Notes: generated by a model from the letters alone, not told the origin. A DNA stretch of 49,180 nucleotides, filler included, from Bipalium vagum (GCA_037834085.1; 2 parts of 2 records of this genome joined end to end with filler, not necessarily neighbours in it), one strand, 5' to 3'; positions 30,200 through 47,335 are shown, counted from the whole stretch's first letter. Program-made: numbers and translations.

Positions 30200-31118
30200 C
30201 GATCTAGTTATCAGATCCGAATTTTTTTACTTCAGGGCGTCTGCACATTTCCTCGTGTAGATTGATATCTTCTTTAATTATTTGGAATTAAATCAATTTG
30301 GAGATCCACTCGTTGAGTAGAGTTGATATATTGGCTCTCTGCGTCGACAAACACTTTAGCCGTTATGTTTGATTTGATCTGTTCGGTGAGATAGTCTTGG
30401 ATGGTATTTTGACGACAGTTCTGAAATATTCTCGACTGATCACAGCCGACGAGAACATGGGATAGAGTTTCCTCTGGTTCATCAGATCTTCGGCATCCTC
30501 TGAATGGTAGGCCGTGTCGAGCATTGATTTGGATAGAGTATGATCTGGCTCTATGTATGAAATTCCATGCAGAGATGGATATATTTCGCCATTGAGTATA
30601 GGTCTGGTGGAGATGAATGATTGACCAATTGAAGACGCGAAGCGACCAGCACTTGATTGATTATTCCAGTTGAATTTCCATGAATGATCGATTAGATGAT
30701 GAAGTCTTTTGGAAATTAATTTGGCATCCTTTGGTTTGACAAGTACCTCATTTTTATAGTCTGGATTAAGTTGTTGGAAGACTTTAAGGCAAATTCCATT
30801 TTCATTGAGTTGATATTTGACCGATATCTTGTGTCTCGTTTGCAATTGGTTAATTGGAACTGGTTTTTCTCCACCAACAATTTTGATGAAATTGGACATC
30901 TAGGTCCTTCTCAGGTCACTTAGGGATTCCCTAATCCCGATGGGTCCCCTTGATAAATCCTTTTGCGTAGACATATCCATGAGTTTTAACCTTGAATCTT
31001 TGAATTGCTGAAGTAGAAATTGATTCGTTGATTGAATTGTTGTTGGGCAAATTTCTTTTGATGTTGCGTCCCAAATAATTAGAATATTAAATTTTGTGAA
31101 ACTATATAAACTCTTCAA
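30200..31118 (-). pseudogene. Orphan interrupted ORF (>280 codons), possible RNA-virus-derived element
   Basis: ORFs 30900-31118 and 30363-30899 are one frame broken by a single TAG; a frameshifted continuation 'IKSNITAKVFVDAESQYINSTQRVDLQIDLIPNN' follows. No introns. Confidence 0.45.
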
Positions 31119-31490: not shown

Positions 31491-32147
31491 ATGAATAAAG
31501 AATATGATTTAGAGCCACTTATTTTATCCTTGTGTAAATTTCGTGAAAAAGTTATTCAGCTAAGAGCACTAGTAGAATTTCAAGTATTATTTAAAAAGTA
31601 AAATTCTAGAATGTATTAGTCATTTAGTTTACGGATCACGAATGGTCTAAATATTTGAATATATTTGGATTGTTAGCCTCAGAATTGAATAACATTGTGA
31701 AAACAATGCTTACGGATAAGAATTTTCCGCTTGATAATTTGGCAATGATTCCTGTTGCACTCAGTCCAAATTCTGATTCTGTATTAATTAATTCAACACA
31801 AGATCGTATTAAAGCCTTTACTTATGAAGTTCCTCCTCAGTATTTACGTACTTTGCTAGACCCAAAGGTATGTTCCATTTAATTATTTTTAGTTATTCAA
31901 TCTATTCTAGGTTCAACATGCAAGGAAAGATCAATTAATTAAAGCCAATAATTTATCACAAGAAATTGTGTCTAAACAAAGTACATCAAATAAAGTTGTA
32001 GACAATGCAATCAAAGAGTTATCCTCGTTGAAAAGTCAAATTGACGTAGAAAGTCTGGATAAGCCAATGAAATCAGCCCAGTTAAATGAAATACAAGACT
32101 TATTTAATTGTATGGTAACCGGTAAAGGATTAAAACTAACAAAATAA
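31491..32147 (+). CDS. MED8: Mediator complex subunit 8, 3 exons, 189 aa
   Basis: Exons 31491-31583, 31628-31867, 31911-32147 with 44- and 43-nt GT-AG introns, all phase 0. 'WSKYLNIFGLLASELN...IPVALSP...TQDRIKAFTYEVPPQYLRTLLDPKV...MVTGKGL' matches the MED8 pattern W...F.LL..L / P..LSP / T..R...F..E..P..LRT..DP.V / GKGL. Confidence 0.88.
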
Positions 32148-36086: not shown

Positions 36087-36818
36087 TATAGTATCTCCCC
36101 TGTTCGATTAAGCTTTATTTTTATTGGTTCATTTTCGCGAGGCAATCAAAAAACTGGGTATACTCTACCATAGCCTCTAAGAGCCGAAGTCAGGTTAAAG
36201 TTAACACACTAAATATTGACCAGTTCTAATTATTGGCCAGACACTGAAAAAATTTACTCCAAGAGGTAAATGATCTTACTCGTGACCTAGGACTTTCTAA
36301 GAGAAAAACAGAACTCTTAGACAATTAAAGATTTTGCACGATGATGTTAGTTCAAACCATTTTCAACAGAAATTTAAAATTGCTACAGGTTTTTAAAAAT
36401 AATTCTTTGTGCTATTGCTTTGACGCTAATTGTCTTTTTAAAGCTTTTAACCAAGCTCATTGTAAATGAATGATGTTTATTTATAGATGGTTCTAAGGTA
36501 AGCTTTAAAGTTTAAATAATTTTTTCAAATATAATAAATTTATGATTATAAAAAATTATTATTTTAATTAAAAATGATTTTAAAATTAAAAATTCCAATG
36601 GTATAATTACACTCATATTATTACCATCATTATTATTTAATTTTATAACAGGAAATTTTATTTAGAAAATTGGTCACCATTACATTTTACCAACATTGTT
36701 AAACTGAAGAAAAATATAAAAATCTAAATCATTTATAGAAATATATGAGAAACATTGGTTTTTCGTTTGTAATCTATTCTTAATAAATAGAAATCTATTT
36801 AAAGAAGCATGTCAAAAT

Positions 36819-39800
36819 TCATGTTGAATTGGAAAAATATACATCATATTTGAGCAGAAATCTGATAAATTTATATTTACTTTTTATCGATTCCATCAAT
36901 ATCAGAATTTTCGTTGAGTTCGGATCTATCAAACTTCTAAACGGAATGAAATAGATCACGTGGTATTGGTAAAATTTGAACAGGACAGAATCTTTGAAAT
37001 TGTCAGAAATAACCGATGTTAAGTGATTGCCGATATTGGTCGATAAATATTCGCTGGTCAGGAAAATGGTCAAATAATAACCTATTTTCGACGCCTTGAT
37101 TGCATTGATAAACGTGCCGATGTAATCGAATTTTTTTTCAGCTATTATGGCTATATGAGTCAAAATGCTTCGCAGGTCCGATATTTCAGACGACGTGATG
37201 ATAATAGTACAATTGTTACTTTTGGCCCGTTCAATAAGACTGATCACTCCCTGTCTAGCCAATGAATCTAGATACGGCAAGGGATCGTCGAGAATGATTA
37301 TTTTTGGATAGCCTATTATTGCCAGAGCAATATCCAATTTCTTAACACTGTTTTTTGACAAATCCTTCACTCGTTTTTCCTTTTCCTCAATCAATAACAG
37401 AGTATTCAAAATTTCCAAAACAAAGCACTTCAAACTGTATTCCGGTAACAATTGTATCCGGCACCAATATGTCATTATTTCCTCAACAGTCAAATCAGGA
37501 ATGAAATACGGACTATCGGAACAATATCCGATTTTGATACCGAATTTCTTCCAGTCCAGCGACTCGATCAGATTGTTATACAAATAAACACCGCCGGTCG
37601 TCGATGATTTTCGGCCGAGAATTATATTCAACAAATTTGTTTTTCCACTGTAATTCCTACCAATTATTCCCCAAACAGTTCCCTGGGGAAATTCCACATT
37701 GAGGTCCTCGAAAATCAATTTTTTGTTCTGCACCAAAGAAATGTTTTTCAAATAGAGAAACGAGTTTTCATTTTCCAAAGTCGTCAATGGTTTTTGCTCG
37801 ATTGAGGCTCCTAGGGAATTTTTCAGCAGACCCAAAACGTGCTTGGTTCGATATTTTTGAAAATGCCACAAAAACATCGATGAAAAGTATACCAACCACT
37901 GACAGAAAAGCAACTGATTTAAAAATATCGCATCATCCTCATCCAGCTTTAGCCCGGCATTCAAAGTGGCAGCGGGAAAAATAATTTTGAACATATTCTC
38001 GACCCAATAAAATTCGATGTTCGTTGTTTTGACACCTCCGAAACTCATTTTTTGAATTTTTATCACATAGTTTATGAGATAAATGATGTTAAGATAAAAA
38101 ATGCTGAAAATGTCCAAAAACTTCATGAAAAAGCTGATGGTCGCCTTAAAACCTGTCACATAGTCGACCAGCAGTTTTAAGGAAGAGTCTGCCAGCACAA
38201 ATAAAAAGTAAATCGATACTATGTACAACGGTGTACCGACCATCACTGTCAAATTGTGGTCGTCCATTACGTAAAGAAATAGAATCATGAAAATCATAAT
38301 CAATAAATTAAGACAAACGTCCAAAAAGTATATCGGCAAATACAAAAGCGTCACATGTACCCCGGCCAATTTGTGGATCATGTAAAACCGTTGCTGGACG
38401 CTCTGTGAAACGTACCGATACGCCGTTACGGAATAGGCACACAAAATAACCATAATCAAAACAAGCAGGTAATTGAGTTCCACTGCACCTAGTTGGACTT
38501 GAAGATCGATTCTTTCAAATTGCGTGATGGCGATTTCTTTAGGAGAAATGAGAATGTTGTCCACAATGTTATAGGCAAAGATTCGATTTTTGTAATCATT
38601 GGCCATGACAATGGCTTTCGTTATCTTGTTTTTGTCTTTTTTGTTATAGCTATTAGCACCAATGTAATAAATGGCAAACAGAGTTGAATTATTGTACTCG
38701 AGATAATCGATTTCTCCTTGCTCGAAAAGATAGTTCTGAAATTTCAGAAATCCAGCCGTTTCGTTAGACTGGTCAAAGTGCTTTGTGTTGACTGTTGAAA
38801 TGACTTTGACACTTTTTTGAGTGGTCATAAACAAATATTCACACTGTTCAACGTTTCCTTGGCAACCAATAAATATTTTATGATTTTCATTGATTTCTTC
38901 CAAATAAGTGATGGCCGAGTATCCATTGTCCATAAGAAAGTTTGTTGTGTGGTTAAAACTGACTACGCCAGTCCAAATTATGAAAATGATTATGGGGATG
39001 GCAAATCGCATCACCAACCGATTGGGATAACAGAAATAAACGTTCAATCTTTGCATTAAAATGAGCGACAAGTACCGCCGGTAAAGTAGCGATGTCCGAT
39101 GGATTTTTTTCGGCAAAACGTCGATCTTACAGTACGTCATGCGTCTTTTGTTCTTCAATTTCATATAATAATCATACGCATTGGACAGAAAATGTCTCAT
39201 GCCAATCGAAACGAACTTGTAACGCCATAATCCGAGTCGAGAGCCGTGGAAATTCAATTTGTTGAATAGGTCCCACAATTCGTTCACGGACATTTGTGGC
39301 ACATCGAAATATGCGACGCCGTCGGTGGTTTCGTTGTGTTTGATGACGGGAAAGGTAAGTTTCATGTAGCGGATGAACGTGTAATCGCCAATATCCGGTT
39401 CGACAGAGCAAAGTAATTTGTAAACCATTCGATTGATGGTGATGTTCTCCACATCGATTTGCGAAATGGCTCTGCCCTCGATTATCACGATGACGCTATC
39501 TGTTACGTATTCGATAACATCGGAATTGCAGCAAGTGTAAATGATGGTTTTCGATGATTTCTGATGGGCGAATAGAGCGTAAACGTTTTGCATGGAAACG
39601 AAGTCCAACCCATCGACAGGATCATCCAGCAAAACGATCGGCTTTTCTGACAGAAAACAGCAGGCAATACTTACCATTCGGATGACGGATATTGGACAAT
39701 TTCTCAAAAGATCATTCAAATATTGACCCAGCTTTAACATATCGATAAAGATAACCAATCGCTGTGATAAAACTTCGAAATTGGTTCTCTTTCTCTGAAG

Positions 39801-41552
39801 AATCAGTTTGAAATATTCTGACACCGTCAAGAAACTTAGCAGTCTAACATCGTCGACATATTTACTGATGTAACTGTAGGCCTCTTTTCGGTGAGTGACA
39901 ACACTTTTCCCTTTTATGATAACGTTTCCGCTGTTGAATGAATAAGCACCTGCAATGATATTGAGTAAAGTGCTCTTTCCAGAACCGTTTGGTCCGAGTA
40001 TGCTGGTGATTTTGTTCTCTCGGAATTTCACATTGACTCTTTTGAGAATGTTTTTCGATTTCCCGTTGACCTTGAACGATTTCACCACGTTGTGAACTGT
40101 GATTATATAATCTGATTTGGAAAAAATGATGTGACCATCAGTGTCGATTACAGATTTCGAAGGGTTGATGTTTTCGAATTTTGGTTTCTTCTTTCGGATC
40201 TTTTTCGTGATTTTCGAAAATTTGCTTTGATACGACTTCCATGTTTTCATCTTACGACCTTTTATTATGTAGATCTTTTTTTTCAGAAAATTATTGAACA
40301 AAATAACCAAAACATAGGCTATGATATGGACAACCTGAAAAAACAGTGCGACAACAACACCAAAACATTTCTCAGAATATTCATGAAACATGTCTGAATT
40401 ATCGATAAAAAACCGGAATTCAGATTGAAGATTCTCCAGAAATATCAGTGACCAACTGACAGCAAACAGCGGTGACAAGCATGTCAGATATTGGAACATG
40501 CAATTCATCCCGCCCTGCTGATTGAATGAGAACACATACAACAGCTGGGGAACCATAATCATCCCCAGGAAATAGAGAATATTGTACGTACTCATGTCCA
40601 GCTCACACAACACGATTCCAAACATTATAATTGTGTTGGTGTTTATTAGAAATATGATCAACAAAATATACCACGGAATACTGTAAATAATTCTCGAATT
40701 AAAATAGTCGGTACACAAAGTAAAACTAGTACAAATATAAATAACACAACACAAAATCTGATAAAGACCGATTATTATCATATAATTGATCACGGCGTAC
40801 CCCCCTTTCTGTGGAAACAAAGATTGAGAGCTCAAGTGTCTGATGTTCTTTAAATGCAAAACAACACAGCCGAATATTAGATAATAAAACATCATCTGAA
40901 TTGACGGCCACTGAATTTCCAAAAATAGAGAGTTTGGCAAGCCAGATATGAGGATTTCGGGAATTTTTTCTTCTGGATAGTTGGAAAATAATGCGCATTT
41001 TACAACATAGAGAAGCGTCAAATAAACTGACTTGACGTCTTTCGATAATGAAAGCTCAGAGCCATATCGACCTTTAATATTTGACGCGAATGTCAAACGA
41101 TTTACGTGGTAATTGGAAAATGTCATGTTGAGAAAAGTTAAATCTTGTAACACAACATTTTCTATTACGGTGAAGTTCAAAATTTGATAGTCTAAGTAGG
41201 TATATTCGAAATAAAGCAACGTTTTCCATGTTTCGATGATGGGAATTACACTAAAGGCATTTGGAAATGCTTTTACCTCATTTGGAAACGCTAGTTCTTG
41301 AAACATTTTTGTCAAAATTGGATTGATTGGAACGTATAATATATACAATCTAGGTCTAGGAAATAATTTACTACATTCCAAAGGCAGAAATTGAGGTCTT
41401 ATTGGTTTTAAAATACCACGGAAATGTATCATTAATAATGGATTGAGAAATGCAAACATGAGAAGAAAGGGAAAATAATTTTTGCAGTATAATAAATTTA
41501 GTTTCAAAAACAAACCTGTTATACGAATAGTCCAAAATATCTTATTTTTCAT
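36819..41552 (-). CDS. Full-size ABCA-subfamily transporter-like protein, single exon, degenerate NBDs
   Basis: Uninterrupted 1577-aa ORF with TMD-NBD-R-TMD-NBD-R layout, each half having one TM helix, an extracellular loop, then a TM bundle. Walker A GPNGSGKST and GRNYSGKT; Walker B LLDDP and ILDDP. Confidence 0.92.
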   Translation of the reverse strand: MKNKIFWTIRITGLFLKLNLLYCKNYFPFLLMFAFLNPLLMIHFRGILKPIRPQFLPLECSKLFPRPRLYILYVPINPILTKMFQELAFPNEVKAFPNAFSVIPIIETWKTLLYFEYTYLDYQILNFTVIENVVLQDLTFLNMTFSNYHVNRLTFASNIKGRYGSELSLSKDVKSVYLTLLYVVKCALFSNYPEEKIPEILISGLPNSLFLEIQWPSIQMMFYYLIFGCVVLHLKNIRHLSSQSLFPQKGGYAVINYMIIIGLYQILCCVIYICTSFTLCTDYFNSRIIYSIPWYILLIIFLINTNTIIMFGIVLCELDMSTYNILYFLGMIMVPQLLYVFSFNQQGGMNCMFQYLTCLSPLFAVSWSLIFLENLQSEFRFFIDNSDMFHEYSEKCFGVVVALFFQVVHIIAYVLVILFNNFLKKKIYIIKGRKMKTWKSYQSKFSKITKKIRKKKPKFENINPSKSVIDTDGHIIFSKSDYIITVHNVVKSFKVNGKSKNILKRVNVKFRENKITSILGPNGSGKSTLLNIIAGAYSFNSGNVIIKGKSVVTHRKEAYSYISKYVDDVRLLSFLTVSEYFKLILQRKRTNFEVLSQRLVIFIDMLKLGQYLNDLLRNCPISVIRMVSIACCFLSEKPIVLLDDPVDGLDFVSMQNVYALFAHQKSSKTIIYTCCNSDVIEYVTDSVIVIIEGRAISQIDVENITINRMVYKLLCSVEPDIGDYTFIRYMKLTFPVIKHNETTDGVAYFDVPQMSVNELWDLFNKLNFHGSRLGLWRYKFVSIGMRHFLSNAYDYYMKLKNKRRMTYCKIDVLPKKIHRTSLLYRRYLSLILMQRLNVYFCYPNRLVMRFAIPIIIFIIWTGVVSFNHTTNFLMDNGYSAITYLEEINENHKIFIGCQGNVEQCEYLFMTTQKSVKVISTVNTKHFDQSNETAGFLKFQNYLFEQGEIDYLEYNNSTLFAIYYIGANSYNKKDKNKITKAIVMANDYKNRIFAYNIVDNILISPKEIAITQFERIDLQVQLGAVELNYLLVLIMVILCAYSVTAYRYVSQSVQQRFYMIHKLAGVHVTLLYLPIYFLDVCLNLLIMIFMILFLYVMDDHNLTVMVGTPLYIVSIYFLFVLADSSLKLLVDYVTGFKATISFFMKFLDIFSIFYLNIIYLINYVIKIQKMSFGGVKTTNIEFYWVENMFKIIFPAATLNAGLKLDEDDAIFLNQLLFCQWLVYFSSMFLWHFQKYRTKHVLGLLKNSLGASIEQKPLTTLENENSFLYLKNISLVQNKKLIFEDLNVEFPQGTVWGIIGRNYSGKTNLLNIILGRKSSTTGGVYLYNNLIESLDWKKFGIKIGYCSDSPYFIPDLTVEEIMTYWCRIQLLPEYSLKCFVLEILNTLLLIEEKEKRVKDLSKNSVKKLDIALAIIGYPKIIILDDPLPYLDSLARQGVISLIERAKSNNCTIIITSSEISDLRSILTHIAIIAEKKFDYIGTFINAIKASKIGYYLTIFLTSEYLSTNIGNHLTSVISDNFKDSVLFKFYQYHVIYFIPFRSLIDPNSTKILILMESIKSKYKFIRFLLKYDVYFSNST

Positions 41553-41942
41553 TTAAAATACAATTACTGTAAAAGGCACAGTTAAACAATAATTAGTGGT
41601 ATAAAACCATTTCAAACATTTTTCAGAAGTAAAATGTCTTATTATAAAATATATTCTCCTCTTTAATCATAATTTAAAAATTTGATTTCAAAGAGAAATT
41701 AAATTAGATAAATTTATTTCAAAATAATAAATAAAATAGTTCTTATTAATCTTTTATTAACTATTGTTAATTTTAAAAATTTTTATTAATTTAAATTGCT
41801 TTATTGAAATAATACTTAAAGAAAATCCAATGTAGTTCAAAATATTCACGATTTTATCAAAATTTACATTTGTGTTTGCCTGCAAATTGTGTGTTCTGTT
41901 TGTAAAGTCGGTTAGAAATAAAAAATATTTTTATTGTTACTA

Positions 41943-43227
41943 TTAGGCTGTAAATTAATTTTTCTTGATTTTTTACAAAATATTAAGTAAAATAATTTAT
42001 TTAAGAATAATAATTAAAATCATTCGATAACATAATTTCCGTCATTTCTTAAGACCTTCTCCCATTTTCCACCATTTTTTAGAAATCTTTATTCCAGAAA
42101 TTGATAGATTTGCTATGACAGAAATTTGTGATCCAAATTTTAAGATCATGCTCGTTCTAAAAAGTAATATCATCTTTGATTTGGTTTGACAGCGAGCGGA
42201 AAAAATATAAATCTGTTGGTCCAAGGTCTGGAGAATACGGAGAGTATTGAAGAACCTACTACATGAGTTCTTGGAAGATGGTTTTGGAATTATTTTCTGT
42301 GTGGTCTGGCGTTATCATGGGGAAGAATCACTTTGGCTCTTTTATATTGGTATTTCACTTTAATAATGTAGATTACTCGACGAACTTGGTTTATGTATCG
42401 GAGCTTATGACTGTCTTATCTTGTAGGATCATTTCCCAGTGTATCCGACAATCAAAATTCTGCCAAACACAGATCATAATTTTTATTGGATGCAACTCTG
42501 GTGTACCTGTGCAACCAGGAGTCACCCGCTCCTTCATATATAGGCATCATTATCATCCCTTGTTATGATTCGATGAAGACAACGCTCTTTGCGCCGCGTG
42601 TTACTAGGTGTCTTGCAATTTTTAAAAAACTTTCTCTGAGTTTTTCATTGAGGTGATATGGTGCACAGGAACCAATTTTTCGACAATAACCATTTGATTT
42701 TAGGTGGCAGAAGACTGTCATTGGATTGCGGTTCATCTTATGTGACAATTTCCTTCGTGTTTTATGATCGTTACAGTTTGATTATTTAACTTGTACTATG
42801 TAATATTTGCAGATGTTATTCCTTAAATGATCATCTGAACATATTGATCGTAAACTCCTGTTATAAAGATTTGCTAGACCTTTTTAATCATTTGTTTCAT
42901 TAAAGTAATCATTAAAGTTTCTTTTTGAATATATAGACTATGCTTTTTAAATTTATAAAAGTATCACAAATTTTACAATATAACTTGTTTTGAGAATGAT
43001 ACACGAATTCATCATTATAAATCTTTACATGCGGTATAATTGACTCTTTATCACTCTTTAGATTTCGGCATTATATGGAATTTTAAAAAAATTATTGAAA
43101 CAAATTTTAAATTTTAAAATAGCATTTTAAAACTGTAATAATAAATAAAAAAGGTATTTATATGGCATTTAACTTGCTCTAACGATACCATTTTCGAGAT
43201 CAAGGATTTTATTATTTTTTGGCCTAA
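41943..43227 (-). mobile_element. Degenerate mariner element (about 1.28 kb)
   Basis: 'TVFCHLKSNGYCRKIGSCAPYHLNEK', 'VILPHDNARPH', 'PYSPDLGPTDLYFFRSLSN'; both ends read TA-TTAGGC. Confidence 0.85.
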
Positions 43228-45188: not shown

Positions 45189-47335
45189 ATGAATAAAATG
45201 AGTGAATATAAATGTGAAATTTGTCATCAAATTTTTAAAACATCACATGCATTAAGTGAACATAAAAAATCAAAAAAACATTTATTTCATCTAATTTCAG
45301 TTCAAGTGCCTTTATTAAATAATGTTAATTTAAGGAATGAAGATGACAATGCTTCTCAATTTAAAATATAAGAAAAACGTTTCATGATATTTCTTCACCA
45401 AATATTACGATAATAAAATATGTAATAAATAATAAAGATAATATAATGAAGAGTTTTATTTAGTTGCCAGGTAATCATAAACAATCTGGCTTTTAAATTC
45501 AAAAAATTGACCTACTTTCAATGACTTTGGAATCTACATAGATACATAATTTTCGACATTAGAATTAGAACACCGCTCAAAAGTATTAGGCAGGTACTTG
45601 AATTTTTAAATATAATACAAGTAGATCATTTTCACAAGGATTTATTGTTTTAAAAAAGTTTATTTAGATTATAAAAATCTCCATTTTATGTTAAATATAA
45701 ATAATAAAGATAATATAATGAATTATTTACAAAACATGTTAAATTTTAAAAAATTAAATATCAATTTATAGTTAATGTTACGATAATTAATACTAGAGAT
45801 AATGAATTCATTACAAAAAATTGAGTCTGATCAGATTATAAATTTAAATAGAAATATAACAGAGGATGACATGATAAAAGGTATTTCTAATTATCAAGAA
45901 TTTTTGGATAGAGAAATAGATAGAGTACAATGATCAGGATGGATAATTGACAAATATAAATAAATTCAATAAAGGGGGGTTCTTTTATAGAATAACATTT
46001 TGGAAGTAATTGTTTTGTTAATACAAAAACACATAATAAATGTTTTCAATATTGTGTATTAGCTCATTTAAATCCCTTAAAAAAATGCTAATGATCCAAA
46101 TAGATATACTTATGATACTGAATTATTTAAAGAATTAAATAAGTCTACACCAGGAAATAATTGGGTTTCAATTAATGATATGTAACAATTTGAAAAAAAG
46201 ATAAACATACCAATAAATGTATATGAATTAATGGGTAAGGGAATGTAAGAGAAAACTATAAAACAGATTTAATATATTATTCAGATTTGAATGAGAAATT
46301 AAAGAGTCTATTGACCTCTTATTACTATCCAACAAAGTTGACATTCCTTCGGAAACATCCAACAAAAATGGAATAATAATTATCATTATGTTTTAATTAA
46401 ACATTTTCAAAGAGACGTGTATGGAGAAATAGGATATAATTTACGTCCAAGGGAAGAGATAAAATTTTTTAAGAGGTATTTGAATATCAAACAACTTTAA
46501 AAGCTCATGAAAATCATAAAAGATTATGTATAGATCATAAACCAGCTAAGGTAAACATGCCAAATACTGAATTCAATAAATTTAAAGGTTATAATAATAT
46601 CTTAAATTTTAATAATTATTCAAAAATGATTAGAGTACCATTTATCATAGTGCGTGATATTGAAGCTATTAATATACCTATTCATAATGTAAGAAAAATA
46701 GAACAGACGAAGTCTGCTTTAAGTTTAGTTAACAAAAAAAACAGTGGGGATCTTCTCGAAGAGAATCCAACTTCGTTGGATCTCTTTAATCAAGTACCCT
46801 CGTGCATACATGCTAAATTAATTTCTAAATATCCAGAATTTAAAGAGAAGGAAATTATTATATTTACACGAGAATACTGTGAAAAAGATTTTGTTAAATG
46901 CTTAAATGAAAAGGAAAAAGAATTAAGTGAACTATTAAAAGTAAATATAAAAATGAAAATGAGTGAAGAAGATCCAACGAAGTTGTATCTACAAAGTTAA
47001 GATAAAGTTAATTTTAATAATGCAACAGAATGTATATACTGTAATAAAAGTGTTACAACTGCAAAATATAAATCAAAGGTTATAGATCATGATCACTCCA
47101 ATGGAAGATATAGAGGAGCAGCTCATTACGCATGTAATTTATTAGCTAAAAACCATCTCATATACCCATTTATTTTTATAATGAAAGTAAATATGATTTT
47201 CATTTAATTATAAGAGTTAGGTGAACAAGCAATTCATAAAATTGATACTATACCTTTAACAGATGAAACATACATTAGTTTTAAGTAAGGATGTATTCAA
47301 TTTATGGATTCTTTAAGAATGTTTCAATCAAGTAT
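45189..47335 (+). pseudogene. Maverick protein-primed DNA polymerase B, 5' half (C2H2 finger, exonuclease, endonuclease VII insert)
   Basis: 'YKCEICHQIF...LSEHKKSKKH', 'SGWII...KGGSFI', 'KCFQYCVLAHLNP', 'YHYVLIK', ExoI-like 'VPFIIVRDIEA', 'CIYC...VIDHDHSNGRYRGAAHYACNL', 'KYDFHLII', 'FMDSLRMF'. Polymerase domain absent. Confidence 0.9.

What the first reader, a model, noticed from the sequence alone, without database searches (positions are those of the whole stretch)
36819..41552. Intact ABCA transporter in which both NBDs appear catalytically dead
Seen: a 4.7-kb ORF with no stop or frameshift, while nearby TE ORFs are almost all broken, which suggests purifying selection. Both NBDs keep Walker A but show the same four losses. 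Q-loop Gln: IGYCPQ becomes ISKYVD and IGYCSD. Signature LSGG becomes CPISV and LSKNS. Catalytic Walker B Glu: LDEP becomes LDDP in both. H-loop His: TTH becomes TCC and TSS. Established: these residues are needed for hydrolysis, and asymmetric ABC proteins (CFTR, SUR, TAP) normally keep one consensus site. Inference: a pseudo-ATPase ABCA that may bind nucleotide and act as a scaffold, sensor or channel regulator, not a lipid pump. This is the best candidate for an undescribed system here.
Basis: partly seen in the sequence, partly recalled or inferred. Interest (0 to 1): 0.78.

Follow-up and report, generated by a model that had tools for sequence, protein, structure and literature searches.

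The report
ABCA transporter with two dead ATPase sites
An intact, single-exon gene encodes a full-size ABCA-type lipid-transporter look-alike in which both ATP-burning sites have lost their catalytic residues but kept their ATP/Mg-binding residues. Four distant relatives share this state, so it looks like a preserved "pseudo-pump", not a dying gene.

Summary
Window 36819-41552 (-) is one uninterrupted 1577-codon ORF, with a chance probability of 1e-42 to 1e-55. It encodes TMD1/ECD1-NBD1-RD1-TMD2/ECD2-NBD2-RD2. Both NBDs match ABCA3/ABCA4/ABCA1 best, and the AlphaFold models match solved ABCA structures.

Gapless alignments show that both NBDs lack the Q-loop Gln (Asp), the signature SGG (CPIS; SKN), the Walker-B Glu (Asp) and the H-loop His (Cys; Ser). 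The Walker-A Gly/Lys/Thr, Walker-B Asp and D-loop Asp are kept.

An exhaustive HMMER search found only four close relatives, all UniParc-only records, at 54, 45, 24 and 23% identity. All four lack the signature and H-loop in both NBDs. NBDs and R-domains are the best-conserved parts (53-66%) and linkers the worst (24-33%). That pattern indicates long-term purifying selection on a non-catalytic state.

At least six other ABCA3-like proteins in arthropod proteomes are also degenerate in both NBDs. I found no paper describing this.

Most likely this is a nucleotide-binding, non-hydrolysing ABCA derivative that does not pump. Expression, dN/dS, the organism and the function remain untested.

The parts
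36819..41552 (-). Whole single-exon ORF, 1577 aa plus stop: ABCA-type full transporter look-alike
40263..41552 (-). Residues 1-430: TM1 (about 26-48), small ECD1 (about 50-250), TM2-TM6 (about 253-417)
   Evidence: Hydropathy. AF2 N-half model with helices 214-449. Foldseek top hits are ABCA4/3/1/7. No Pfam ABC2_membrane_3 hit.
39438..40103 (-). NBD1 (residues 484-705), degenerate
   Evidence: Pfam ABC_tran. Best PDB match is ABCA4 NBD1, 77.6 bits.
39969..39995 (-). NBD1 Walker A GPNGSGKST, intact. G520, G523, G525, K526 and T528 are invariant in all 5 family members.
39852..39854 (-). NBD1 Q-loop position: Asp567 in place of Gln
39684..39698 (-). NBD1 signature position: CPISV in place of LSGGM. 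Cys619 is invariant in the family.
39618..39632 (-). NBD1 Walker B LLDDP: Mg-binding Asp643 kept, catalytic Glu replaced by Asp644
39528..39530 (-). NBD1 H-loop position: Cys675 in place of His
39153..39437 (-). Regulatory (R) domain 1, residues 706-800; 52-66% identical within the close subclade
37848..39152 (-). Residues 801-1235: TM7 (about 846-864), ECD2 (about 865-1020), TM8-TM12
   Evidence: Hydropathy. AF2 model. Foldseek gives ABCA3 TMq 0.60-0.64.
37098..37757 (-). NBD2 (residues 1266-1485), degenerate
   Evidence: Pfam ABC_tran. Best PDB match is ABCA3 NBD2+RD2, 91.4 bits.
37638..37661 (-). NBD2 Walker A GRNYSGKT (N1300, G1303, K1304 invariant in the family; the 4th-position Gly is not conserved)
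37515..37517 (-). NBD2 Q-loop position: Asp1346 in place of Gln
37347..37361 (-). NBD2 signature position: LSKNS in place of YSGGN
37281..37295 (-). NBD2 Walker B ILDDP: Asp1422 kept, catalytic Glu replaced by Asp1423 (in all 5 family members)
37188..37190 (-). NBD2 H-loop position: Ser1455 in place of His
36822..37097 (-). Regulatory (R) domain 2, residues 1486-1577, with the conserved GYYLTIF motif
   Evidence: Alignment to ABCA3 1404-1695

Best explanation
The ORF is a real, selectively maintained gene. It encodes a highly diverged ABCA3-like full 'transporter' whose two composite ATP sites can no longer hydrolyse ATP by the canonical ABC mechanism.

Shown:
- ABCA architecture and fold.
- Loss of the Q-loop Gln, signature SGG, Walker-B Glu and H-loop His in both NBDs.
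- Retention of the Walker-A Gly/Lys/Thr, the Mg-binding Walker-B Asp and the D-loop Asp.
- The same pattern in four relatives as distant as 23% identity.
- NBDs and R-domains are the most conserved parts of the family.

Inferred:
- The ancestor of this small clade lost the trans-acting signature and the H-loop in both sites first. One member, P0017, still has the NBD1 Glu and the NBD2 Gln. After a burst of change the new state was kept.
- NBD1 at least still binds nucleotide/Mg2+ as a ligand or structural cofactor. NBD2 is less certain, because its A-loop aromatic is gone and its P-loop is looser.
- Without signature motifs the ATP-sandwich NBD dimer that drives the ABCA power stroke should be weak or absent. 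The protein is therefore not a cycling lipid pump.
- It more likely acts as a static or ligand-modulated membrane protein: a lipid-binding or lipid-presenting receptor, a scaffold, or an adenine-nucleotide sensor. Its own well-conserved but non-canonical TMDs would do that work.
For: - ORF integrity: P 1e-42 to 1e-55. Simulated neutral change of only 1% leaves the ORF stop-free in 3% of trials, and 2% in 0.25%.
- The Logan contigs of run X1 cover 36571-39000 and 39758-42000 as long unbranched pieces at about 24x with no differences. So no near-identical parent copy is collapsed there.
- ABCA identity: both NBDs hit ABCA3/4/1/7 first. The AF2 model of residues 430-1577 (pLDDT 76.8, pTM 0.72) gives 20 ABCA structures as top Foldseek hits, with TMq 0.51-0.64 over about 1170-1290 columns. 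ABCB/ABCC follow at about 0.35 or lower. The N-half model also hits ABCAs first. Atlas neighbours of P0001 are all ABCA clusters.
- Motif losses.
- Family: an exhaustive HMMER search of 1.84 billion representatives gives P0001 (1334 bits), P0016 (310) and P0017 (284) above a generic ABCA level of 183 bits or less. P0002 came from the word search. The five form a 100%-supported clade on a stem of 1.2-1.9 substitutions/site.
- Selective retention: of 57 (NBD1) and 52 (NBD2) positions that are at least 85% conserved in canonical ABCAs, all five members keep exactly the P-loop, Walker-B Asp/Pro and D-loop residues. They lose the catalytic ones. They also share new invariant residues (C619, Y580, D1423, K1404, I1437, L1460).
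- Domain identities: NBD 53-66%, RD 48-66%, TMD 43-56%, linkers 24-33%.
- GC3 is 0.45 against a flank GC of 0.27.
- Literature: ABCA4 E1087D (the same Glu->Asp change) has low basal ATPase and no substrate-stimulated ATPase, and both Walker-B Glu residues are required (PMC11405800). In ABCB1, mutating both Walker-B Glu to Asp, Gln or Ala leaves only residual ATPase (PMC7756269).
Against: - No expression evidence. The only public run holding the DNA is one DNA run, and no RNA run does.
- The four relatives are database gene models (UniParc-only) with no DNA on record. dN/dS could not be computed and their intactness is a prediction.
- Nucleotide binding is inferred from motif conservation only.
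- Asp can act as a weak general base, and Asp/Glu at the Q-loop position could still ligate Mg2+. Slow hydrolysis is therefore not excluded.
- One 554-nt contig of run X1 (39214-39787) diverges in its last 164 nt, with 5 substitutions and 20 nt of gaps. This hints at a second, possibly frame-broken, allele or partial copy.
- Phylogenetic placement is affected by long branches (tool warnings).
Confidence: 0.68

Rival explanations
1. Young processed retrocopy or duplicate that is not under selection and simply has not yet accumulated stops. The real functional gene lies elsewhere in the genome.
For: - The ORF has no intron over 4.7 kb, while the neighbouring Med8 gene has two 43-44-nt introns in 570 nt of CDS.
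- It sits among repeats and TE debris.
- A variant contig hints at a second related sequence.
Against: - Only 1% neutral divergence would already break the ORF in 97% of simulations.
- A parent within 1% would collapse or branch the k-mer assembly. Yet 36571-39000 and 39758-42000 are long unbranched contigs at the lowest local depth, with zero differences.
- No poly(A) tract follows the stop.
- GC3 of 0.45 has not decayed toward the flank GC of 0.27.
- Even if this copy were young, the doubly degenerate state is a property of the whole deep clade.
Confidence: 0.08
2. The protein is still an active, if slow, ATP-driven lipid transporter. It would use non-canonical chemistry: Asp as general base, Asp/Glu at the Q-loop position binding Mg2+, and other residues replacing the signature and the His.
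For: - Walker A, Walker-B Asp and D-loop are strictly conserved.
- The replacements at the catalytic and Q-loop positions are acidic in four of five members at each site, not random.
- TMDs are conserved within the family.
Against: - The same E->D change in ABCA4 abolishes substrate-stimulated ATPase (PMC11405800).
- Here it is combined with loss of the H-loop His and of both signature motifs in both sites.
- In the review read here, the degenerate site of full-length human ABC proteins is always NBS1 alone (PMC7756269).
Confidence: 0.12
3. The NBDs are purely structural remnants that no longer bind nucleotide at all. The protein works as a nucleotide-independent membrane protein.
For: - The NBD2 A-loop aromatic is lost in all five members, and the 4th Walker-A Gly varies (Y/N/N/S/G). 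P0001 even has Ala at the first Gly.
- Another degenerate ABCA-like protein (Galendromus LOC100900973) has lost the NBD1 P-loop altogether. Full loss therefore happens.
Against: - The NBD1 P-loop GP[NI]GSGK[ST]T, Walker-B Asp and D-loop Asp are invariant across members that share only 23% identity. The catalytic residues next to them were free to change.
- Such selective retention is hard to explain without ligand binding.
Confidence: 0.1
4. Assembly or reading artefact: the ORF or the motif losses come from mis-assembly or alignment error.
For: The assembly consists of short contigs, and the middle of the gene (38971-39787) is fragmented into short unitigs in the Logan assembly.
Against: - An independent assembly agrees base for base over most of the gene.
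- The motif alignments are gapless.
- The same residues recur in four independent database proteins.
Confidence: 0.02

Closest known systems
Human ABCA3 (PDB 7W01/7W02) and the ABCA3-like group of animal ABCA full transporters
   Same: - Domain order TMD1(ECD1)-NBD1-RD1-TMD2(ECD2)-NBD2-RD2 and similar length (1577 vs 1704 aa).
- Best sequence match for NBD2+RD2 (91 bits).
- Best structural match (E 1e-45, TMq 0.60-0.64).
- Falls inside the ABCA3-like part of the tree.
   Different: - Only 15-18% identity overall.
- The TMDs no longer hit Pfam ABC2_membrane_3.
- ECDs are small.
- Every catalytic motif except Walker A, the Walker-B Asp and the D-loop is lost in both NBDs.
ABC proteins with one degenerate nucleotide-binding site (ABCC family including CFTR and SUR, TAP1/2, some human ABCA/ABCB/ABCG; review PMC7756269)
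   Same: The same kinds of substitution occur: Walker-B Glu->Asp/Ser, H-loop deviation and a degenerate signature. In those proteins the degenerate site still binds ATP tightly.
   Different: In those proteins only NBS1 is degenerate and NBS2 is a consensus, hydrolysing site. Here both composite sites are degenerate on both faces.
Other doubly degenerate ABCA3-like proteins found here: Onthophagus taurus XP_071053342, Trichogramma kaykai KAL7306042, Trichonephila clavata GFQ80635, Dinothrombium tinctorium RWS12061, Galendromus occidentalis LOC100900973, and Logan contig protein P0111
   Same: - Full-length ABCA-like proteins with two or more catalytic-motif losses in both NBDs, always including the signature and the H-loop.
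- Some group near the family in the tree.
   Different: - Only 23-30% identical to the window protein in the NBDs.
- The Onthophagus and Trichogramma proteins keep the Walker-B Glu in both NBDs; Trichonephila and Dinothrombium keep it in one; P0111 and Galendromus in neither.
- Onthophagus groups with a canonical moth ABCA, so that loss is independent. The grouping of the mite proteins with the family may be long-branch attraction.
P0125, an unannotated 1609-aa single-ORF ABCA from an ENA metagenome assembly (locus L081)
   Same: - Sister to the family once the other degenerate proteins are removed (97% SH-aLRT).
- Same NBD1 P-loop GPNGSGKST and a GLD D-loop.
- Also an uninterrupted ORF.
   Different: - Fully canonical Q-loop, LSGGQ, LDEP and H-loop, and it has Pfam ABC2_membrane_3.
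- GC is 40%, so it comes from another organism.

Membership tests
ABCA subfamily of ABC transporters | Two ABC-type nucleotide-binding domains in one chain | tested here: met
   Pfam ABC_tran in two stretches, E 2.6e-38, in all 5 family members.
ABCA subfamily of ABC transporters | NBD sequences closest to ABCA NBDs rather than to other subfamilies | tested here: met
   The top 13 PDB sequence hits are ABCA3/4/1/7 for both NBDs. The next are bacterial NosF and ABCG at E 1e-17 to 1e-19.
ABCA subfamily of ABC transporters | Full-transporter topology with a large extracellular domain between TM1-TM2 and between TM7-TM8 | tested here: met
   Hydropathy gives TM1 at 26-48, the next TM at 253, TM7 at 846-864 and the next at 1021. 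The ECDs are short (about 200 and 155 aa), and ECD1 residues 112-174 are modelled at pLDDT below 50.
ABCA subfamily of ABC transporters | ABCA (type V) transmembrane fold plus cytoplasmic R domain after each NBD | tested here: met
   For the AF2 model of 430-1577, the Foldseek top 20 are all ABCA, with TMq 0.51-0.64 over about 1170-1290 columns, against about 0.35 or lower for ABCB/ABCC. The sequence alignment to ABCA3 runs through RD2. The N-half model is weaker (TMq 0.29-0.35) but its top hits are ABCA.
ABCA subfamily of ABC transporters | TMD recognisable as Pfam ABC2_membrane_3 (PF12698) | tested here: not met
   No hit at E <= 1 in any of the 5 family members, although canonical relatives carry it. 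The TMD sequence is too diverged. Fold evidence stands in for it.
Catalytically competent ABC ATPase | Walker-B catalytic Glu, H-loop His, Q-loop Gln and LSGGQ signature in at least one composite site | tested here: not met
   All four are absent from both NBDs of the window protein. Both composite sites therefore lack cis and trans elements.
ABC proteins with one degenerate site (CFTR/SUR/TAP type) | One consensus, hydrolysis-competent site retained | tested here: not met
   No consensus site remains. In human full-length ABCs only NBS1 is degenerate (PMC7756269).
Nucleotide-binding P-loop domain | Walker A GxxxxGK[ST] and the Walker-B Mg-binding Asp | tested here: met
   NBD1 GPNGSGKST and D643; NBD2 GRNYSGKT and D1422. 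These residues are invariant across the family. Actual binding is not testable with these tools.
Processed retrogene | Intronless copy with a 3' poly(A) tract and target-site duplications | tested here: inconclusive
   The ORF is intronless while the neighbouring gene has introns. No poly(A) tract follows the stop. Target-site duplications were not searched for. The 3' flank is a high-copy repeat.

The most novel reading that the evidence does not exclude
This is a member of a conserved clade of ABCA-derived pseudo-ATPases. It would be the first full-length ABC 'transporter' lineage maintained by selection with no consensus ATP site. It would have been re-purposed from a lipid pump into an ATP-binding but non-hydrolysing (or nucleotide-independent) membrane receptor, scaffold or sensor. 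The same transition would have happened repeatedly in arthropod-type ABCA3-like paralogues without being noticed.
Probability: 0.45. Interest if true: 0.8.

Novelty: new variant of a known kind. Interest (0 to 1): 0.62.

Why it matters
The ABC field holds that transport needs at least one hydrolysis-competent site. The known 'degenerate' ABC proteins all keep one.

A full-size ABCA that lost both sites and has still been conserved over deep divergence, with its P-loops intact, would be a natural experiment. It asks what an ABC scaffold can do with ATP binding alone, or with none.

Similar doubly degenerate ABCA3-like genes lie unremarked in beetle, wasp, spider and mite proteomes. That gives tractable organisms in which knock-down, localisation and biochemistry could be done. 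It also warns that genome surveys counting 'ABCA transporters' include non-pumps.

Tried and rejected
1. DNA of the four relatives, for dN/dS. The look-up of encoding contigs found no record for P0001, P0002, P0016 or P0017. They exist only as UniParc ids UPI000609E10A, UPI000606877A, UPI000602DF85 and UPI000606E39B.
2. The metagenome scan with the family alignment returned only generic, mostly bacterial, NBDs at 31% identity or less. Loci L001-L080 were not used further.
3. Expression. Only one DNA run (coded X1) holds the sequence and no RNA run does.
5. Rfam found nothing in the piece.
6. Organism identification was not achieved.
   - Nearest named canonical hits are arthropod (Anopheles, a pseudoscorpion, a tick), but the family sits on a very long branch.
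   - My guess that the relatives come from salmon louse was not supported. The published survey lists three ABCAs, one full and two partial (PMC4587908).
   - A planarian guess gave nothing usable.
   - A word search from P0016 found no closer named relatives.
7. The Atlas could not read the window protein itself.
8. Literature searches for a described ABC transporter with two degenerate sites found none. That is absence in the open-access library only.
9. The Med8 exons were scanned one by one.

Full report
**Observation**

The piece 26610-49180 contains one outstanding ORF, 36819-41552 on the minus strand, of 1577 codons. The next longest stop-free stretch is 178 codons. The flanks are 26.8% GC and carry a stop in 7.75% of codons in every frame. 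At that rate a stop-free run of 1577 codons has P about 1e-55. Using the ORF's own other five frames gives 1e-42. Logan's independent contigs of the only public run that holds this DNA (coded X1) reproduce 36571-39000 and 39758-42000 with no difference.

In gapless HMMER alignments to ABCA4 NBD1, ABCA3 NBD2 and 39 canonical ABCAs:
- NBD1 reads GPNGSGKST (Walker A, intact), D567 for the Q-loop Gln, CPIS for LSGG, LLDDP for LLDEP, and C675 for the H-loop His.
- NBD2 reads GRNYSGKT, D1346, SKN for SGG, ILDDP, and S1455.
- The A-loop aromatic of NBD2 is also gone (Q1275).

**What it is**

- Pfam sees two ABC_tran domains.
- Both NBDs match ABCA3, ABCA4, ABCA1 and ABCA7 ahead of everything else in the PDB. 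The NBD2 alignment runs on through the ABCA-specific R domain.
- Hydropathy gives the ABCA topology: TM1, an extracellular domain, five TMs, NBD1, RD1, TM7, a second extracellular domain, five TMs, NBD2, RD2.
- An AlphaFold2 model of residues 430-1577 (pLDDT 76.8, pTM 0.72) has twenty ABCA structures as its best Foldseek matches. ABCA3 is first at E 1e-45, and TMq is 0.51-0.64 over about 1170-1290 columns. ABCB and ABCC proteins follow at TMq about 0.35 or lower.
- The N-terminal half (pLDDT 73.7) also finds ABCAs first, at lower TM-scores. Part of ECD1 is poorly modelled.
- The one ABCA feature not met is sequence recognition of the TMD. No family member hits Pfam ABC2_membrane_3 even at E = 1.

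**Relatives**

- A word search of 5.8 billion clusters found two full-length relatives, P0001 (54% identity) and P0002 (45%).
- An exhaustive HMMER scan of 1.84 billion representatives with residues 430-1577 added P0016 (310 bits) and P0017 (284 bits). Everything else is generic ABCA at 183 bits or less.
- All four are singletons known only by UniParc identifiers, with no contig on record.
- A search from P0016 found nothing closer. A metagenome DNA scan found only generic NBDs.
- In trees the five sequences form a 100%-supported clade on a very long stem (1.2-1.9 substitutions per site). The clade sits inside the ABCA3-like group. It lies next to mite and tick proteins, or, once other degenerate proteins are removed, next to an unannotated canonical single-ORF ABCA from a metagenome (P0125). 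The tool warns of long-branch attraction, so I treat the placement as 'ABCA3-like, probably of arthropod type' and no more.

**The degenerate state is old and is maintained**

- All five members lack the signature and the H-loop His in both NBDs. P0017 alone keeps the NBD1 Walker-B Glu and the NBD2 Q-loop Gln. This suggests an order of loss: signature and H-loop first, the rest later.
- I took the positions that are at least 85% conserved in canonical ABCAs (57 in NBD1, 52 in NBD2). The ones kept in all five members are almost exactly the phosphate-binding loop (G520, G523, G525, K526, T528; N1300, G1303, K1304), the Walker-B Asp and Pro (D643, P645; D1422, P1424), the D-loop Asp (D650; D1429) and a few fold glycines.
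- The catalytic positions are lost in all or nearly all members. Several replacements are themselves invariant in the family (C619, Y580, D1423, K1404, I1437, L1460).
- Within the family the NBDs (53-66% identity) and R domains (48-66%) are better conserved than the TMDs (43-56%), the ECDs (38-53%) and the linkers (24-33%).
- This is the signature of purifying selection on a new, non-catalytic state, not of decay.

**Is this copy merely young?**

- It has no intron, whereas the neighbouring Med8 gene has two GT-AG introns of 43-44 nt in about 570 nt of coding sequence. A retroposed origin at some time is therefore plausible.
- In simulation, 1% of neutral substitutions already introduces a stop in 97% of trials, and 2% in 99.75%. 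An unconstrained copy would have to be within about 1% of its parent.
- Such a parent would collapse or branch the k-mer assembly. Most of the gene instead lies on two long unbranched contigs at the lowest local depth, about 24x.
- No poly(A) tract follows the stop. GC3 (0.45) is far above the flank GC (0.27).
- One caveat: between 38971 and 39787 the Logan assembly breaks into short unitigs of depth 31-34. One of them diverges over its last 164 nt, with five substitutions and 20 nt of gaps. A second allele or partial copy, possibly out of frame there, may exist.

**Mechanism**

- The Walker-B Glu is needed for hydrolysis, not binding. The natural E1087D variant has low basal ATPase and no substrate-stimulated ATPase (PMC11405800).
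- In ABCB1, replacing both Walker-B glutamates by Asp, Gln or Ala leaves only residual ATPase. In full-length human ABC proteins only NBS1 is ever degenerate, and such sites still bind ATP tightly (PMC7756269).
- Here both sites combine Glu->Asp with loss of the His, the Gln and the trans-acting signature. Canonical hydrolysis, and probably the tight ATP-sandwich dimer that powers ABCA lipid movement, should be lost.
- The strict retention of the P-loop, Mg-binding Asp and D-loop argues that nucleotide is still bound, most convincingly in NBD1.
- My best reading (confidence about 0.68 for the core, lower for the specifics) is a nucleotide-binding, non-hydrolysing ABCA derivative that no longer pumps. 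It would serve as a lipid-binding receptor or scaffold, or as a nucleotide-modulated membrane protein.
- Rivals, with their refuting tests listed in the rivals section: slow non-canonical ATPase (0.12), purely structural NBDs (0.10), young unconstrained copy (0.08), artefact (0.02).

**Comparison and novelty**

- It works like, and by fold is, an ABCA. It fails the test for a catalytically competent ABC ATPase, and the test for the 'one degenerate site' class (CFTR, SUR, TAP).
- I surveyed the 164 proteins fetched by then. Of 147 other proteins with exactly two scoreable NBDs, 115 were fully canonical, 23 had a single loss and 4 had one badly degenerate NBD.
- Five had two or more losses in both NBDs. 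They come from Trichogramma kaykai, Onthophagus taurus, Trichonephila clavata and Dinothrombium tinctorium, plus an unnamed transcript-like contig.
- A later look at the proteins fetched by the P0016 search found a sixth, from Galendromus occidentalis.
- They are annotated 'ABCA3-like', 'ABCA1-like' or 'uncharacterized'. The beetle one groups with a canonical moth ABCA, so that loss is independent.
- Double degeneration of ABCA3-like paralogues is thus recurrent. I found no paper that describes it (open-access library only).
- I rate the finding a new variant of a known kind.

**Limits**

- The organism is unidentified. It is an AT-rich, repeat-rich eukaryote with short GT-AG introns.
- There is no RNA evidence and no DNA of relatives, so no dN/dS.
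- The function is inferred from sequence alone.
- The Med8 exons were scanned separately.

Noticed in passing
window 31492-32146 (+): A small Med8 (Mediator subunit 8) gene. It has three exons (31492-31583, 31628-31868, 31912-32146) separated by two GT-AG introns of 43-44 nt. Exon 2 hits Pfam Med8 at E 9e-15. This shows the genome has very short introns, in contrast to the intronless 4.7-kb ABCA ORF.
   Followed up: partly
window 39214-39787: A 554-nt Logan contig of run X1 (depth 33, against 24 for the long contigs) matches the gene but diverges over its last 164 nt. It has 5 substitutions (39624, 39627, 39686, 39705, 39740) and gaps of 10, 7 and 3 nt (39714-39735). These fall in the NBD1 helical region just before the signature. 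It may be a second allele or partial paralogue, and the 20-nt gap total is not a multiple of 3.
   Followed up: no
window 36400-36770 and 41636-42000: The flanks immediately 3' and 5' of the ORF are high-copy repeats in run X1. Summed contig depth is about 400 and 64-99, against about 24 for the gene.
   Followed up: no
window 46473-47204 (+): Two adjacent stop-free stretches are separated by an in-frame stop. The second hits Pfam Endonuclease_7 (E 1e-6), with a C..C...DHDH..G.YRG..H..CN motif. This looks like debris of a polymerase- or endonuclease-carrying mobile element.
   Followed up: partly
window about 42160-42237 (-): The translation YSPDLGPTDLYFFRSLSNQIKDD resembles the C-terminal part of a mariner/Tc1 transposase. 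This was recognised by eye only. Pfam gave no hit for the surrounding stop-free stretch, which lies in a different reading frame, so the motif itself was not scanned.
   Followed up: partly
window 30277-31118 (-): ORFs of 178 aa and 72 aa lie in one frame, separated by a single stop. Neither has a Pfam hit. Probably a broken gene or TE ORF of unknown family.
   Followed up: partly
proteins P0097, P0101/P0166, P0103, P0137, P0111, P0187: Full-length ABCA3-like proteins of Trichogramma, Onthophagus, Trichonephila, Dinothrombium, an unnamed Logan contig and Galendromus also have two or more catalytic-motif losses in both NBDs. The Galendromus protein has even lost the NBD1 P-loop. This is a recurrent, apparently undescribed class.
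   Followed up: partly
locus L081:271-5100 (protein P0125): A canonical 1609-aa ABCA encoded by one uninterrupted ORF on a 6-kb ENA metagenome contig (GC 40%). It shares the family's NBD1 P-loop GPNGSGKST, and it is the family's sister once the other degenerate sequences are left out of the tree.
   Followed up: partly
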